Source: Blastocladiella emersonii ATCC 22665 | Taxonomy: Eukaryota > Fungi > Blastocladiomycota | NCBI GenBank assembly: GCA_025594325.1 | Contig: JANHCV010000001.1 | Span: 1,364,001-1,428,000, forward strand | DNA length: 64,000 nt | Direction of reading: 5' to 3' | Shown here: piece by piece, positions 55,998 through 63,400 of the stretch | Layout of the letters: the number at the start of each line of letters is the position of its first letter | How positions within the stretch are numbered: the stretch's first letter is position 1 | Position numbers and translations under genes: made by a program | The notes under the pieces: generated by a model | Told to the model about the DNA's origin: nothing | Databases searched by the model: none | Seen by the model: only the letters and a program-made list of their open reading frames with translations

Positions 55998-58900
55998 ATG
56001 GCCGGCGCGGAAATCACCGTGTGGGACGGCACCAACCCGTTCGCGCCGTCGCAGACGGTCGCGCTCTTCCTCCTCCAGACTATCATCATCATCGCGCTGG
56101 CCCGCGGCCTCGGCGTCATCCTGAAGCGCCTGCAGCAGCCGCGCGTCATCGCCGAGGTGCTCGGCGGGATTATTCTCGGTCCGAGTGTCATGGGCCTGAT
56201 CCCCGGTTTCTCGGCCACCATCTTTCCCAAGCAGAGGTATGCTTAGTGCGAGCGTCCGTGAAGTTTCGAATGGACGCTGACGACGTCCATCGTTTGTGTA
56301 GCCTTCCGCTCCTCGGCATCGTGTCCAACGTCGGCCTCATCCTGTACCTCTTCCTCGTCGGCCTTGAGCTCGACCCCAAGATCCTCCGCGCCAATGCCCG
56401 CCAGTCTATTGTACGCCTCCCTCGCATTGCCCCGTGGTGTGAAACGAGTGGCGGCTGACACGTGCGCACGCGTAGCTCATCTCGGTCGGCGGCATGGTCG
56501 TACCTTTCGCGTCGGGCGTCGCCGTCGCCAAGCTTCTCTACGACACACTGATGCCCGCCGACACCACCGTGCCCTTCTCGTCGTTTTTCCTGTTCCTCGG
56601 GGTCAGTATGAGCATCACCGCCTTTCCTGTCTTGGCTCGGATCTTGACCGAGCGCAAGCTGCTCAATACCGAGGTCGGCATGGCCACAATCGCCGCCGCG
56701 GCCGTCGACGACTTTGCGGCATGGTGTCTGCTGGCGCTCGTCATCTCGATCATCAACGCCTCGTCCTGGACCCACGCCGTGTACACGTTCGGCACAACCA
56801 TCGCCTACGCGCTGTTCCTGTTCCTCGGCGTGCGGCCCGTCCTCCTCCGCGCCATCGCATGGGCCGACGGATCATCCTCGAGGACCGAGCTCCTGACAGT
56901 CACCATGTTCCTGCTCATCTTCGTGTCGGCCATGTTCACGCAGATCATCGGCGTCGACGCCATCTTCGGCGCCTTCCTCGTCGGCCTCTGCGTCCCGCAC
57001 GAGTCCGGCTTCGCCGTCGCCATCACCGAGAAGATCGAGGACCTCGTCACCATCGTGCTGCTGCCGCTCTACTTCACCAACTCCGGGCTCAAGACCCAGC
57101 TGTCGCTGCTCAACGACGCCACCATCTGGGGCATGGTCGCGCTCGTCGTCTTCGCCGCGTGTGCCGGCAAGCTGATCGGATGCACGGCAGGCGCGCGTCT
57201 GGCCGGCATGTCCTGGCGCAACTCGATCACGGTCGCCACGCTCATGAACGCTAAAGGGTTGGTGGAGCTCATAGTCTTGAACCTCGGTATAGACGCCAAG
57301 GTCATTTCGCCGCAGGTCTTCGTTGTCATGGTGATCATGGCCGTCACGACGACCATGATGACGAGCCCGATCGTCTCGTACCTCGACCCGGCCGCAACTG
57401 CGCTCACCATCACGGGCGCCGTGGCCAACCCCTCGGGCAAGCGCGCCATGAGCCCGACGGCCACGACCGACGGCCGCGACGACGACGACAAGTTCCAGGT
57501 CCTGATCACGCTCGACCGCTTCGAGCGCGTGCCGGCGCTCATGACGCTGGTCCAGTCGCTGCGCACCTCGCCCGGTACCCCCGACACGTCCTCGGCCGTG
57601 GCGCCGAGCACGCAGGGCGCGCTCAGTCTCGTCGCGGTGCGGCTCATGGAGCTGTCGGAGCGCACGTCCGAGGTGATGCGGCTGGCCGAGTCGGCCGAGA
57701 CGCTGCGGCGCGACCCGCTCGTCAACGTGCTCGTGACGTTTGCCGCGCTCAACCGCGTCGCGGCGCGGTCGGTGCTCGGCATCTGCCCCGCGGGCGAGTT
57801 TGGCGAGCGCGTCGCGGCCGAGGCGCACTCGGCGGCCGTCGACCTGATCGTGCTGCCGTACTCGGGCTCGCGGCTGTCGGGCCAGTTTGTCGCGGCGGTC
57901 CAGCGCGCGGCGTCGGTCACGGTCGGCGCGCTGCTCGACCAGGGGCTGGCCGGTACGAGCGACGGCGCGACGGTCAAGTTTGCGGCGAGCGTGACGGCGC
58001 GCCGGCCGACGCTCCTGTTCGTGTTCCTGGGCGGCGAGGACGACCGCGACGCCGTGGACGTGGTGCTGCGCATGGCGGCGTCGGGCCAGTTTGACGTGGC
58101 CGTGTTCCGCGTGCGGTACGGCGACGAGGAGGCGCGGCTCGAGTACGGCCCGCTGGCCAAGTCGAAGAAGCGCAACAGCATCATCGGGTCGATTGCGGGC
58201 GGCGTCGGCGCGCGCAGCCGCAAGAAGAGCGGCAACGGGTCGACGCCGCGCCCCGCCGACCTGCTCGCGGCGGGCAGTGGGTCCGACGTCAACCTGGCCG
58301 CGTCCGCCGACCACGACGCGGCTGCGTCGCCCGCGGCCTCGCCCGCCGTTGCCGGTATCGCGGGCGAGACGCCGCCGCTGTCGCTCGACCTGCCGCTGAC
58401 GCGCACGCGGTCGTACTCCATGTCGGCCGCGACGCCCGACGACGCGGCGTTTGCGCGGCTGCGCGACCAGCTCGCGGTCGTGGCCGCATCCGTATCCTCG
58501 GGCAGCATCCGCGTCACGGTCGACGAGTACGAGCACCCGGAGCCGCACGAGTTTGCGCTGCGCCGCGTGCTCAACCTGGCCGCGTCGGACCTGGTCGTGA
58601 CGGGCAAGCGGCACGGGCTCATGAACGTGCTCGCGCTCGCATCGCAGCTGGGTACCAGCACGGCGGCCACGGCTCCCGCCGCGTCCAAGCTCAAGGACTC
58701 GGAGGTCGAGCTGCTGCCGCACCCGGGCTCGCTCGCTGCCTCTGCGGCCGAGAACGCGGCGGCCAACCAGTTGACGACGCGGTCGCTCTTCTCGTCGCTC
58801 ATCGGCACGGCGCGCGGCAACGGGCTGGTCCGCGAGCCGTCGGCGTGGGACGTGCACGCGGCGCCCATCGCGCCGGGCAACGGCGGGAACGCGGGCAAGA

Positions 58901-59082
58901 GCGGGCCGGGCACGCCGTTTGCGACCGTCAACCTCGCGGCGCCGACAACGACCAGCGACTCGGAGCCGCGCGCCGTGTTCGGGACGTTCGGCACGTTCCT
59001 CGTCCAGCGCGGCGCCCGCGCCTCGATCCTTACGTTGCAGGGTACCGGCTCGCTCGACGAGGTCGTCGGCGGCTCGCACTAG
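55998..59082 (+). CDS. KHA1: K+/H+ antiporter Kha1 (CPA2/CHX-like)
   Basis: QPRVIAEVLGGIILGPS, SITAFPVLARIL, FGAFLVG and MNAKGLVELIVLNLG. Introns at 56237-56301 and 56411-56475. Confidence 0.92.
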
Positions 59083-59278: not shown

Positions 59279-60213
59279 TCACTCGTCATCCACGCCCAAA
59301 TCGAGCCCGTCGTTCAGGTCATCGTCGCTGTCGTCAAAGTCCTCGTCATCGTCCTCCTCGCTGTCGTCCTCGTCGTCATCGCTGAAGTGGCGGCCGCCGC
59401 GCGAGGGACTGCCTGTGACCTTGTCGTCATCGTGCCGCCACTCGTCGGGGTGCACGACCTCGACGCCGCCGGGCTCCCGGTACGCGCTCGTCGCGAAGGC
59501 GGGGCTGGTCTTGGACTTGGACTTGCTCTTGCCGCCCTGCAGCTTGTTCCACTGCAGGGTCTGGTACTGCAGCGTGCCGCGCTTGAGGCGCTCCATGGTC
59601 GCTTGCAGGTTGCGCGCCTACATCTCGCTAGCGTGTGAGTTCCAGTTGAGCGGCAGCAGCGATGGCGAGGGCGTACGTGTTCCTCCTCGCGCTGCTTCTC
59701 GGCCGCCTTCATGGACTCCTCAATGGACAGGGCATGTATCTTCGAGTCCTGTGCCCACTTCAGCCCGGCCATACGCGGTGCCGCGCTCGGCCGACGTGCC
59801 GCGTCCGCCGCGTCCGTCTCCATGGGTCCCGCGTCCGCCTCCGCTGCTGCCACCGCCGCCTCGGTGTTCTCACCCTCAATCGTGGTCTGCGCGAGCGAGT
59901 CGGCGAGCGAGTCGACGCTCGTGCGGCTGGCCAGGACACCGCGGATGATGGCAATCGTGGACCGCACGCGCTCGCCGCCGTCGGGCGGGGCCAGGGCGCC
60001 CGTCTCGATGGACCGGAGCAGGTCGAGCTGGGTCTTGAGGCGCTTCTCGAGCTCGTGCGACGGCAGCGCGGTCAGGGCCTTGGAGTTGGCGCCGGCGGGC
60101 CGCGCGCTCACGTTGCCGATCCGCGACGGGCCGGCGCGGCCGGACGGCGTCGCGTAGGTGGCAAACACCCGGTTGATGTCGCGCTGGATCGATGCGTCTT
60201 GTGTCTGCGTCAT
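59279..60213 (-). CDS. Gdown1/POLR2M (GRINL1A/GCOM2)-like protein, putative
   Basis: Two exons (intron 59618-59676). Motifs ELEKRLKTQLDLL..PPDGGERVR, DSLADSLAQTTI, ALSIEESM..MERL and AYRE plus an acidic tail are colinear with human Gdown1 as recalled. Confidence 0.5.
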
Positions 60214-60402
60214 TGCATGCGTTTACGTCGTGGATTTGGTCGTTGAGGGGAGAGCGGAAGCGCGCGGCGACGTCGGCGTTCGACTCGACGGCCGCGGCCC
60301 AGGTCGCGGCCGGCCGGCCGGCCGCGCGGTGCTGGCTGGCTCAGCAGCTCGGTCTCGACTGCCCTCCACAGCGACGGCAGCACGCAACCACTACTCTCTG
60401 CA

Positions 60403-63400
60403 ATGGACTCTGCCCCGGGAGGCCTGATCATCCGCCGCAAGCGGCCCGAGGGCGCTTCGCGCTCGGCCAGCGACGAGGGCGCGGGCCGGTCGCGCCTGGG
60501 CCTCGACGCCCTCGCCGAGCGCCGGCGACGCGAATCCGCCAGTGCAACGCCGCCACCATCAAGCTCCTCGCCGTCGTACCGCGAGGGCTCGCGCACGCCC
60601 GGATCGGCGGCGCGCTCGTCGGTCCCGCAGCGGAGCTCGGGGCTCGCCAAGCGCTCGTGGGACGACGACGGCGATGATGTCGGGGACGACTACCGCCGCA
60701 CCGCGTCCGGGTCGCACGCGCCGAAGCGCGCCATGACCTCGTCCAACCGTACGCTGTCTCTCCTGCTCACGGTGTGCGCACACGCTTGCTGACGACGTGG
60801 CACGACCCTCGTTCGTAGGCCGCGAAGCGCTCAGCTTCGAGTCCGCGCCCTCGCCCACCGGCTCGGCGTCCTCGGCCCGGTCGGGCACCCCGCCGACGGG
60901 CGGTCTCGTCATGCGCCGCCAGTACCGCGCCCCACCACCAACCGACCCGCCGGGGACCACCGACGCGTGGACGCCGCGGCCCAAGGCCATCGAGGACGAG
61001 ATCGAGGACGCCGAGGCCCTGTGGGAGGACGACCCGACCAAGCTCGACCGCGACTGGTACGATATCGAGGAGGGCATGGTACTTATCTTTCCGCGCGAAC
61101 CGTACTCGCAGCGCGCGCTAACGCTTTCGCGCGTTTCCTCACTAGGCCGTCGACTATGACCACAACCCGTTCGCCGGCTACGAGCAAGACGAGTTTGCCG
61201 CGCCCGCACAACAGCCCGAGCAACCCGCCGCGCCCGCCGCGCGCAAGCAGTCGGTGCGTGCTCGCGAGTACGCGCGCAACACGGACAAGTGGGAGTCGAA
61301 CCGGCTGCTGACGTCGGGCGTGGTGCAGCGCGCCGAGGCCGACGAAGACGACGACGACCACGAGGAGCAGGTCCACGTCATGGTCCACGACATCCGCCCG
61401 CCCTTCCTCGACGGCCGCGAGGTCCACACCAAGCAGCTCGAGACCGTCAGCGTCATCCGCGACCCGACCTCCGACATGGCCGTGTTTGCGCGCCAGGGGT
61501 CCGCCCTCGTCCGCCACAAGCGCATGGACAAGGAGCGCCAGAAGGCGACGCGCGAGCGGTTCGATCTCGCGGGGACCTCGCTCGGCAACGTCATGGGCGT
61601 CCAGCACGCCGAGGACGCCGAAGCTGACGGACAGCAGCCGCCGGGAACTTCCACTGCGCCGCCCGCGGGTGACGGGCCCGCGCAGTCCGACGCTGCACCC
61701 GCTGCCGCTCAACCCGACCCGGCGGCCGCGCCGGCCCCGAGCAGCGACGCCGTGAGCCAGTTTGCCCGCACCAAGTCGATCCGCGAGCAGCGCGAGTACC
61801 TTCCCGTGTTCTCGGTCCGCGAGGAGCTGCTCAAGGTGATCCGCGAGAACCAGGTCGTCATCGTCGTCGGCCAGACGGGTTCAGGCAAGACGACCCAGCT
61901 GACGCAGTACCTCGCCGAGGAGGGGTTCGCGCGCGAGGGCATGATCGCGTGCACGCAGCCCCGCCGAGTCGCCGCCATGAGCGTCGCCAAGCGCGTCGCC
62001 GAGGAGTGCGGCGTCCAGCTCGGCCAAGAGGTCGGGTACACGATCCGGTTCGAGGATTTGACGAGCGACAAGACCAAGATCCGGTGTACGTTATGCCTCG
62101 CTTGGTCCCGCTTCGATTAACGCTGACTTCTCCTGCTTATCCATAGACATGACGGACGGTATCCTGCTGCGCGAGCTGCTCCTCGACAAGGACCTCGACA
62201 AGTACTCGGCCATCATCATGGACGAGGCGCACGAGCGCGCGCTCAACACGGACGTGCTCATGGGCATCATCAAGCGCGTCGTGGCGCGGCGCCGCGATCT
62301 CAAGCTGATTGTCACGTCGGCGACCATGGACGCGGAAAAGTTCAGCCGCTTCTTCGGCAACGTGCCGACCTTCGACATCCCCGGCCGCACGTTCCCCGTC
62401 GACGTGCGCTTCTCCAAGTCGCCGTGCGAGGATTTCGTCGAGGCCGCCATCAAGCAGGCGCTCAACATCCACCTGACGCACCCGCCGGGCGACATCCTCA
62501 TCTTCATGACGGGGCAGGAGGACATTGAGACGACGTGCGCGGTGCTCGAGGAGCGGCTCGCCGACATGCACAACCCGCCGGGCCTGCTCGTGCTGCCCAT
62601 CTACTCGCAGATGCCCGCCAACCTGCAGGCCAAGATCTTCAACCCGAGCCCGCTGCGCAAGGTCGTCGTGGCCACCAACATTGCCGAGACGTCGCTGACC
62701 ATCGACGGGATCCGGTACGTGATCGACACGGGGTTCTGCAAGCTCAAGTACTACAACGCCAAGATCGGCATGGACGCGCTGCAGGTGACGCCCATCTCGC
62801 AGGCCAACGCCAACCAGCGGTCGGGCCGCGCCGGGCGCACGGGGCCCGGCATGTGCTACCGCATGTACACGGACTCGGCGTTCCACGACGAGCTGTACCC
62901 AAACACGATCCCCGAGATCCAGCGGACCAACCTCGCCAACGTGGTGCTGCTGCTCAAGTCCATGGGCGTCGACAACCTGCTGCTGTTCGACTTCATGGAC
63001 CCGCCGCCGCAGGACGTGATCCTCAACTCCATGTACCAGCTGTGGATCCTCGGGTCGCTGTCCAACACGGGCGACATCACCGAGCTCGGGTCCAAGATGG
63101 TGGCCTTCCCGCTCGACCCGTCGCTCGCCAAGATGCTGCTCATGAGCCACACGCTCGGGTGCTCGCAGGAGATGGTGATCATCGTGTCGATGCTCAGCGT
63201 GCCGACCGTCTTCTCGCGGCCCAAGGAGCGCGCCGACGAGGCCGACGCGGCGCGCGAGCGCTTCTTCGTCGCCGAGTCGGACCACCTCACGCTGCTGCAC
63301 CTGTACCTGCAGTGGCAGGGCAACGGGAAACGCGCCAGCTGGTGCATCAAGAACTTTGTCCAGCCGCGCGCCATGACGCGCGCCGACGAGGTGCGCGCGC

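What the first reader, a model, noticed from the sequence alone, without database searches (positions are those of the whole stretch)
59279..60213. Candidate fungal homolog of Gdown1/POLR2M, a Pol II subunit regarded as metazoan-specific
The spliced product of about 290 aa shows four colinear matches to human Gdown1 as recalled. ELEKRLKTQLDLL..PPDGGERVRSTI matches ELREMLKRQERLL..LPDKGKKIFDSF. DSLADSLAQTTI matches DNLFIDRLQRITI. ALSIEESM..ATMERL matches LLSIEESL..KLAERL. AYRE plus an acidic tail matches RYRE..DEDDD. Gdown1 binds Pol II, blocks TFIIF and imposes Mediator dependence (established). A true ortholog in a zoosporic fungus would push its origin back to at least the opisthokont ancestor, with loss in yeasts. 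The gene is head-to-head with PRP16, about 190 bp away.
Basis: inference. Interest (0 to 1): 0.75.

Follow-up and report, generated by a model that had tools for sequence, protein, structure and literature searches.

The report
Fungal relative of Pol II brake Gdown1
A small, mostly disordered protein of the water mould Blastocladiella emersonii carries a statistically recognisable copy of the module by which the animal transcription brake Gdown1 (POLR2M) docks onto RNA polymerase II, so this "animal-only" regulator probably predates the split of animals and fungi.

Summary
The gene is real. It has two exons on the minus strand (60213..59677 and 59617..59279, 59-nt GT..AG intron) and equals NCBI protein H9P43_000507 of Blastocladiella emersonii (291 aa). 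PRP16 lies head-to-head, 189 bp away.

The protein alone matches nothing in Pfam or the PDB. A search of 1.8 billion proteins found only Blastocladiomycota relatives (Allomyces, Catenaria, B. britannica).

Profiles of that small family, with the acidic tail removed, put human Gdown1/POLR2M first in the whole PDB:
- E = 3.8e-4 for the trimmed family profile.
- E = 0.008 for the N-terminal block alone.
- E = 0.017 with the query left out.

The alignment covers human residues 6-99. This is the RPB10-binding region with the LPDKG motif, which reads PPDGG here and LPDNG/LPDRG in relatives. A weak second stretch lands on human 299-329 (LLSIEESL), the start of the protrusion-binding helix.

The Catenaria orthologue's best Pfam hit is GCOM2 (E = 1.3e-4, below the curated cut-off). 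Language-model and fold searches also return GCOM2 clusters, one of them from Mucoromycota.

Verdict: homology of the N-terminal Pol II-docking module is well supported. Full-length orthology is plausible but unproven. Published papers still call Gdown1 metazoan-specific, though databases already hint at fungal members.

The parts
59677..60213 (-). Exon 1, codons 1-179 (start ATG at 60213..60211)
   Evidence: Translation; equals residues 1-179 of P0001; GC3 is 0.89.
59618..59676 (-). Intron, 59 nt, GTACGC...ATGTAG
   Evidence: Sequence. The frame is restored across it. The Allomyces, Catenaria and B. britannica proteins align without a gap across the junction.
59279..59617 (-). Exon 2, codons 180-291 plus the stop codon (59279-59281)
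   Evidence: Translation; equals residues 180-291 of P0001.
59914..60078 (-). Residues 46-100: Gdown1-type RPB10-binding-region-like module (short helix, helix 52-70, PDxG loop, helix from 81)
   Evidence: The family profile aligns here to human POLR2M 15-68 / 6-99. The AF2 model of the block has pLDDT 91. Invariant L55, L59, Q62, L65, P77, D78 and G80 match human L24, L28, Q31, L34, P45, D46 and G48.
59974..59988 (-). PPDGG (residues 76-80), counterpart of the LPDKG motif of Gdown1 and TTF2
   Evidence: Read from the sequence. P-D-x-G is invariant in the family: LPDNG in Catenaria, LPDRG in B. britannica. The motif's function in human is described in PMC4007455.
59558..59754 (-). Residues 154-199 (spanning the intron): invariant L162-S163 followed by a long helix, with invariant R189, L190, G193 and T194. 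Candidate protrusion-binding region.
   Evidence: AF2 helix 151-207, pLDDT 77-94. HMMER's secondary stretch aligns to human 299-329 at 3.4 bits. This block is not significant on its own.
59282..59389 (-). Residues 256-291: acidic tail (23 D/E of 36, no K/R) ending in the invariant family motif D-G-L-D-L-G (59294-59311)
   Evidence: Composition; invariant columns D282-G287.
60214..60402 (.). 189-bp divergent intergenic region shared with PRP16
   Evidence: The same head-to-head pairing occurs in Catenaria, Allomyces and B. britannica.

Best explanation
The gene encodes a divergent fungal homologue of Gdown1/POLR2M. It is a largely disordered protein that most likely binds assembled RNA polymerase II.

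Shown:
- Residues 46-100 are homologous to the human RPB10-binding region.
- They are predicted, with high confidence, to form a short helix, a helix, a PDxG loop and a second helix.

Inferred from the human cryo-EM structures:
- This hairpin docks on RPB10 and RPB3.
- The invariant L162-S163 and the long helix 160-207 lie on the RPB2 protrusion, where human L303/L304 and helix alpha5 sit. That occludes the site of the small TFIIF subunit and part of TFIIB.
- Pol II is thereby kept initiation-incompetent, either during cytoplasmic assembly and import or when transcription is shut down globally.

Speculative:
- In Blastocladiomycota the shut-down state could be the transcriptionally quiet zoospore.
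- The invariant acidic DGLDLG tail is a family-specific docking motif for an unknown partner.
For: (1) The tail-trimmed family profile A2 puts human POLR2M (28jc_M/9t5h) first in the whole PDB, at E = 3.8e-4 and 23.6 bits. There are two colinear stretches: profile 40-132 to human 6-99, and profile 156-184 to human 299-329. The next best hit, uL29, has E about 0.1.

(2) The N-block profile A4 alone also ranks POLR2M first, at E = 0.0081, on human 15-68 with a single one-residue gap.

(3) Profile A6, built without the B. emersonii sequence, still ranks POLR2M first, at E = 0.017, in the same register.

(4) Pfam GCOM2 (PF15328) is the best hit of the Catenaria orthologue, at E = 1.3e-4 and 22.7 bits. 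It is also hit by two Allomyces members (E = 0.023 and 0.072) in the same register.

(5) Independent methods return the same rare family.
- The language-model search of residues 40-200 gives an Arthropoda GCOM2 cluster at rank 2 and a Mucoromycota cluster with PF15328 at rank 3.
- The Atlas fold search gives a GCOM2 cluster the highest TM by query among the rows listed.

(6) The architecture matches. It has an N-terminal helical hairpin, a disordered linker, LS plus a helix of about 50 residues, and a disordered acidic C-terminus. The human RBR is 19-73, the PBR is 290-344 and L303/L304 are critical.

(7) The family is conserved over four Blastocladiomycota species, with the invariant residues concentrated in exactly these blocks.
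Against: - The B. emersonii protein alone hits neither GCOM2 nor POLR2M.
- No member reaches Pfam's gathering score.
- The profile that still includes the acidic tail (A1) did not list POLR2M at E <= 10, so the result depends on trimming.
- The C-terminal block alone does not find POLR2M. It contributes 3.4 bits, or -0.4 bits without the query.
- No counterpart of the human external-binding region (224-255) was detected.
- The N-block model also resembles ribosomal protein uL29 (TM up to 0.83, Z 7.5-8), a simple and common hairpin.
- The LPDKG module is shared with TTF2, so it does not by itself define an orthologue.
- No RNA run was listed, so expression is unverified.
Confidence: 0.68

Rival explanations
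1. Module sharing without orthology. This would be a Blastocladiomycota-specific protein that shares with Gdown1 only the LPDKG-type RPB10-binding hairpin, as the helicase TTF2 does. Its remaining parts, and therefore its effect on Pol II, would be different. It need not compete with TFIIF or depend on Mediator.
For: Only the N-terminal block is statistically significant. The C half of the Catenaria protein gives no GCOM2 hit on its own. The LPDKG module is known in two otherwise unrelated proteins (PMC4007455). The invariant DGLDLG tail and the N-terminal helix 3-20 were not aligned to any part of the human chain.
Against: The secondary HMMER stretch lands twice on the same human site, the LL-S start of the protrusion-binding helix. 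The order and kind of elements match Gdown1. The Pfam alignments of three members run colinearly for 130-180 residues beyond the motif, to profile positions 140-178.
Confidence: 0.2
2. Chance resemblance. This would be a lineage-specific acidic, disordered protein whose N-terminal part is just a generic uL29-like helical hairpin. The similarity to Gdown1 would reflect helical periodicity plus a short PDxG turn. Its function, for example an acidic chaperone for basic nuclear proteins, would be unrelated to Pol II.
For: uL29 chains fill the structural hit lists, with TM by query 0.62-0.83, rmsd 1.8-3.3 and 18-32% identity, and Z 7.5-8. uL29 is the runner-up in the sequence profile searches at E = 0.06-0.45. 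The single-sequence searches are blank. E-values of 1e-2 to 4e-4 are modest.
Against: POLR2M, not uL29, is first in three profile variants, and there are many distinct uL29 sequences in the PDB. The uL29 alignment needs a 4-residue gap and lacks PDxG. Pfam Ribosomal_L29 is never hit, whereas GCOM2 is, in two independent lineages. Three unrelated search methods converge on the rare GCOM2 family.
Confidence: 0.1

Closest known systems
Human Gdown1 / POLR2M (GRINL1A), Pfam PF15328 GCOM2; chains 28jc_M and 9t5h
   Same: - N-terminal helix, [L/P]PDxG loop and helix, aligned over about 55-90 residues. Eight of the 14 invariant family positions are identical to the human residues.
- A later L-S-x-E-E start of a long helix.
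- Long disordered linkers.
- An acidic C-terminus.
- Small size: 291 aa here against 368 aa in human.
   Different: - The motif is PPDGG rather than LPDKG.
- No counterpart of the external-binding region (human 224-255) was detected.
- There are an extra N-terminal helix (residues 3-20) and an invariant DGLDLG tail motif.
- Scores are below Pfam's curated cut-off.
- Binding to Pol II is untested.
TTF2 (transcription termination factor 2), LPDKG region 410-458
   Same: It shares the LPDKG-type element that is predicted to bind RPB10 (PMC4007455; bioRxiv 10.64898/2025.12.10.693371).
   Different: TTF2 is a large SNF2-family ATPase. The protein here has 291 residues and no helicase domain.
ESM-Atlas cluster of 82 Mucoromycota 'hypothetical proteins' (271 aa), with PF15328 in 11% of members
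   Same: Fungal, of similar length, and among the nearest clusters by language-model features (scores 0.86 and 0.81).
   Different: Scores under 0.9 are leads only.
Ribosomal protein uL29
   Same: The predicted fold of residues 44-101 superposes on the whole of uL29 (TM up to 0.83, rmsd about 2 A).
   Different: There is no PDxG loop, the sequence E-values are weaker, there is no Pfam Ribosomal_L29 hit, and the context is entirely different. This is probably a common three-helix arrangement.

Membership tests
Gdown1/POLR2M (Pfam PF15328 GCOM2) | Score at or above Pfam's gathering threshold (27 bits) for GCOM2 | tested here: not met
   P0001 has no GCOM2 hit at E <= 10. The best family member, Catenaria P0003, scores 22.7 bits at E = 1.3e-4; the Allomyces members score 15.4 and 13.7 bits.
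Gdown1/POLR2M (Pfam PF15328 GCOM2) | N-terminal RPB10-binding region (human 19-73) with the LPDKG motif | tested here: met
   Family profiles align to human 15-68 / 6-99 and rank POLR2M first in the PDB (E = 3.8e-4, 0.0081, 0.017). The P-D-x-G core is invariant. The exact pentapeptide differs: PPDGG here, LPDNG and LPDRG in relatives.
Gdown1/POLR2M (Pfam PF15328 GCOM2) | C-terminal protrusion-binding region: L303/L304 followed by long helix alpha5 (305-344) | tested here: inconclusive
   Invariant L162-S163 plus the predicted helix 151-207. HMMER's secondary stretch falls on human 299-329 at 3.4 bits, and on 301-327 at -0.4 bits. The block alone gives no POLR2M hit.
Gdown1/POLR2M (Pfam PF15328 GCOM2) | External-binding region (human 224-255) | tested here: inconclusive
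   No aligned stretch was reported for this part of the human chain. The linker 102-153 is predicted to be disordered. The region is short and variable, so failing to see it proves little.
Gdown1/POLR2M (Pfam PF15328 GCOM2) | Salt-stable binding to Pol II, competition with TFIIF and TTF2, relief by Mediator | not testable with these tools
   Needs biochemistry or multimer structure prediction.
TTF2 / lodestar SNF2 ATPases | SNF2 helicase core | tested here: not met
   No SNF2_N or Helicase_C domain appears in the 291-aa product.
Ribosomal protein uL29 (Pfam Ribosomal_L29) | Significant match to the uL29 profile or sequences | tested here: not met
   No Ribosomal_L29 hit appears in any Pfam scan. 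PDB uL29 sequences score only E = 0.06-0.45. The fold resemblance is real but within the range of common arrangements.

The most novel reading that the evidence does not exclude
Gdown1 is not an animal invention. A full-length orthologue that locks Pol II through RPB10 and the RPB2 protrusion already existed in the common ancestor of animals and fungi. It survives in Blastocladiomycota, probably in Mucoromycota and perhaps in Basidiomycota, and was lost in the model yeasts. In zoosporic fungi it may enforce the transcriptional silence of the swimming spore.
Probability: 0.5. Interest if true: 0.72.

Novelty: new variant of a known kind. Interest (0 to 1): 0.6.

Why it matters
Papers up to December 2025 describe Gdown1 as metazoan-specific or metazoan-restricted and state that yeast lacks an orthologue. 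Its Mediator-dependent 'Pol II(G)' state is often discussed as an animal innovation linked to pausing.

A fungal homologue would have three consequences.
- It would move the origin of this Pol II lock to at least the opisthokont ancestor.
- It would recast its primary role as something general, such as Pol II assembly and chaperoning or global shutdown, rather than animal-type pausing.
- It would show which residues matter, because only these survive about a billion years: L24, L28, Q31, L34, P45, D46 and G48 in human numbering, and the L-S start of the protrusion helix.

It also gives a name and a testable function to an unannotated protein family of early-diverging fungi.

Tried and rejected
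- Exon-by-exon Pfam and PDB searches found only compositional hits: TFIIA, NOA36, Nop14 and Cwc15 on the acidic tail.
- Full-length P0001 against Pfam gave TFIIA at E = 0.006 on the acidic, low-complexity region. I rejected this as composition. P0001 against the PDB by phmmer gave nothing.
- The word-index search, run three times, found only Blastocladiomycota proteins.
- The exhaustive phmmer search found four true relatives and one false positive, a repetitive 1760-aa NACHT-LRR protein at E = 4e-8.
- The family profile with the acidic tail (A1) against the PDB ranked uL29 first at E = 0.057 and did not list POLR2M. Trimming the tail was needed.
- The C-block profile alone returned coiled-coil noise such as SMC and G-gamma.
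- BEX and DUF7609 hits on the Allomyces C-block (E = 0.005-0.06) were judged to be helix or coiled-coil noise.
- Foldseek and VIA fold searches returned only uL29-like hairpins and no Gdown1 chain. I could not tell whether a Gdown1 chain is in the fold library.
- The metagenome scan for relatives confirmed none.
- No RNA-seq run was listed.
- Literature searches for a fungal Gdown1 or GCOM2 found nothing.
- TFIIF-beta is not present in this window.
- I could not obtain metazoan or Mucoromycota GCOM2 sequences by reference, so no profile-profile (hhalign) comparison was run.

Full report
**The gene**

The window comes from Blastocladiella emersonii ATCC 22665.
- On the minus strand an ATG at 60213 opens an exon of 179 codons, ending at 59677.
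- A 59-nt intron (GTACGC...ATGTAG, 59676..59618) follows.
- A second exon of 112 codons ends with a stop at 59281..59279.

The word search returned the public NCBI protein H9P43_000507 (P0001, 291 aa). Its residues 1-179 and 180-291 equal the two exon translations, and I used that record by its id from then on.

Exon 1 has GC3 of 0.89. Orthologues align without a gap across the splice junction. No RNA run was listed, so expression is not verified.

The neighbour on the plus strand starts at 60403, 189 bp away. It is PRP16: its best PDB match is human DHX38, E = 4e-252.

**Relatives**

The single sequence has no Pfam GCOM2 hit and no PDB hit. An exhaustive phmmer search of 1.84 billion representatives gave four real relatives and nothing else. 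Further word searches added two Allomyces proteins. All of them are Blastocladiomycota:
- Allomyces macrogynus, two loci (P0002/P0006 and P0008)
- A. arbusculus (P0007)
- Catenaria anguillulae (P0003)
- Blastocladiella britannica (P0004)

A fifth hit, a 1760-aa NACHT-LRR protein, is a repeat-driven false positive.

The family alignment shows three conserved blocks separated by variable, disordered linkers:
- (i) L-P-x-x-E-L-x-x-R-L-x-x-Q-x-x-L ... [L/P]-P-D-x-G-x-R-V-x-x-T-I, residues 46-100
- (ii) L162-S163 and then R189-L190-x-x-G193-T194
- (iii) an acidic tail ending in the invariant D-G-L-D-L-G

AlphaFold2 predicts helices 52-70, 81-121 and 151-207 with pLDDT of about 90, and disorder elsewhere. 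The N-block folded alone has pLDDT 91.

**Test of the Gdown1 hypothesis**

Profiles against the PDB (177,635 distinct sequences):

| Profile | Rank of human POLR2M (28jc_M, 9t5h) | E-value | Bits |
|---|---|---|---|
| N-block, 58 columns (A4) | first | 0.0081 | 19.2 |
| Family, acidic tail trimmed (A2) | first | 3.8e-4 | 23.6 |
| Family without the B. emersonii sequence (A6) | first | 0.017 | 18.1 |
| Family with the acidic tail (A1) | not listed at E <= 10 | - | - |
| C-block alone (A5) | not listed at E <= 10 | - | - |

- The A4 alignment runs from profile 3-57 to human 15-68 with one single-residue gap.
- The A2 hit has a first stretch on human 6-99 and a second, weak stretch (3.4 bits) on human 299-329, MPTQLLSIEESL.... 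The runner-up, uL29, is at E of about 0.1.
- The A6 hit keeps both stretches in the same register, but the second scores -0.4 bits.

Pfam:
- GCOM2 (PF15328) is the only hit at E <= 1 of the Catenaria protein: E = 1.3e-4, 22.7 bits against a cut-off of 27, residues 92-242 on profile 15-164.
- It is also hit by two Allomyces proteins (E = 0.023 and 0.072) in the same register.
- About 15 of the 22.7 bits come from the PDxG loop and the following helix.

Independent methods:
- The language-model search of residues 40-200 puts an Arthropoda GCOM2 cluster at rank 2 and a Mucoromycota cluster with PF15328 in 11% of members at rank 3.
- The Atlas fold search lists a GCOM2 cluster with the highest TM by query among the rows shown.
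- Each of these is weak alone. Their convergence on one rare family is not expected by chance.

**What the aligned regions do in human Gdown1**

- Cryo-EM preprints of December 2025 define an RPB10-binding region (residues 19-73, three helices, LPDKG), an external-binding region (224-255) and a protrusion-binding region (290-344, with L303/L304 and helix alpha5). The last of these clashes with the small TFIIF subunit.
- LPDKG is required for tight Pol II binding and is shared with TTF2.
- The significant fungal match is therefore exactly the RPB10-binding region.
- Invariant fungal L55, L59, Q62, L65, P77, D78 and G80 equal human L24, L28, Q31, L34, P45, D46 and G48.
- The weak second match puts the invariant L162-S163 on L304-S305, at the start of alpha5.
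- No counterpart of the external-binding region was seen.

- The first and third hold, the third only in register.
- The second is aligned elsewhere by HMMER.
- The fourth is compositional, and AYRE is not conserved in the family.

**Caveats**

- The E-values are modest.
- They depend on removing the acidic tail.
- No member passes Pfam's threshold.
- The N-block model also superposes on ribosomal protein uL29 (TM up to 0.83, Z 7.5-8), which is a simple fold.
- The LPDKG module occurs in two otherwise unrelated human proteins.

I therefore rate homology of the N-terminal module as well supported, at about 0.85. I rate full-length orthology at about 0.5-0.6.

**Mechanism proposed**

The steps below are inferred from homology; none has been shown directly.
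- The hairpin docks on RPB10 and RPB3.
- LS plus the long helix lies on the RPB2 protrusion and excludes TFIIF.
- Pol II is held inactive during assembly and import, or during global shutdown.
- A role in the transcriptionally quiet zoospore is speculation.

**Novelty**

- All papers I could search call Gdown1 metazoan-specific or metazoan-restricted and say that yeast lacks it.
- None mentions a fungal GCOM2.
- The Atlas cluster shows that Pfam already tags some Mucoromycota proteins, so the extension to fungi is latent in databases.
The decisive profile-profile and reciprocal searches therefore remain to be done.

Noticed in passing
window 60214-60402; L001:1116-7075; L002:3098-8098; L003:3226-7863; L004, L005: The head-to-head pairing of the Gdown1-like gene with PRP16 is conserved in all four Blastocladiomycota species examined. 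The called genes lie about 190-960 bp apart. The Catenaria helicase core is 83% identical to the one in the window. This suggests a long-lived shared bidirectional promoter.
   Followed up: partly
L002:8626-9643, L004:7030-8038, L005:6836-7860: In both A. macrogynus loci and in A. arbusculus, the gene immediately downstream of the Gdown1-like gene, on the same strand, encodes TFIIF-beta (PF02270). This is the factor that Gdown1 displaces in animals. The adjacency is absent in Catenaria, B. britannica and this window (no tblastx hit), so it may be coincidence.
   Followed up: partly
window 59911-60084 (residues 44-101): The Gdown1-type RPB10-binding module is predicted (pLDDT 91) to adopt the fold of ribosomal protein uL29. 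uL29 chains fill nearly all of the Foldseek top-50 list (TM by query 0.62-0.83, 18-32% identity), and uL29 is also the runner-up in the sequence profile searches. Whether this is convergence or ancient kinship was not resolved.
   Followed up: partly
window 59294-59311 (residues 282-287): The invariant D-G-L-D-L-G motif sits inside the acidic tail of all family members. It is an acidic-hydrophobic short linear motif with no assigned partner.
   Followed up: no
window 56494-59082 (+): A large 862-aa ORF with a multi-pass membrane-protein N-terminus converges on the 3' end of the gene, its stop about 200 bp away. Other readers noted it as part of an inverted duplication with a KHA1-like transporter.
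   Followed up: no
P0005: A 1760-aa NACHT-LRR protein reached E = 3.7e-8 in the exhaustive phmmer search through ten repeat stretches. This shows how repeats inflate scores for this query.
   Followed up: yes
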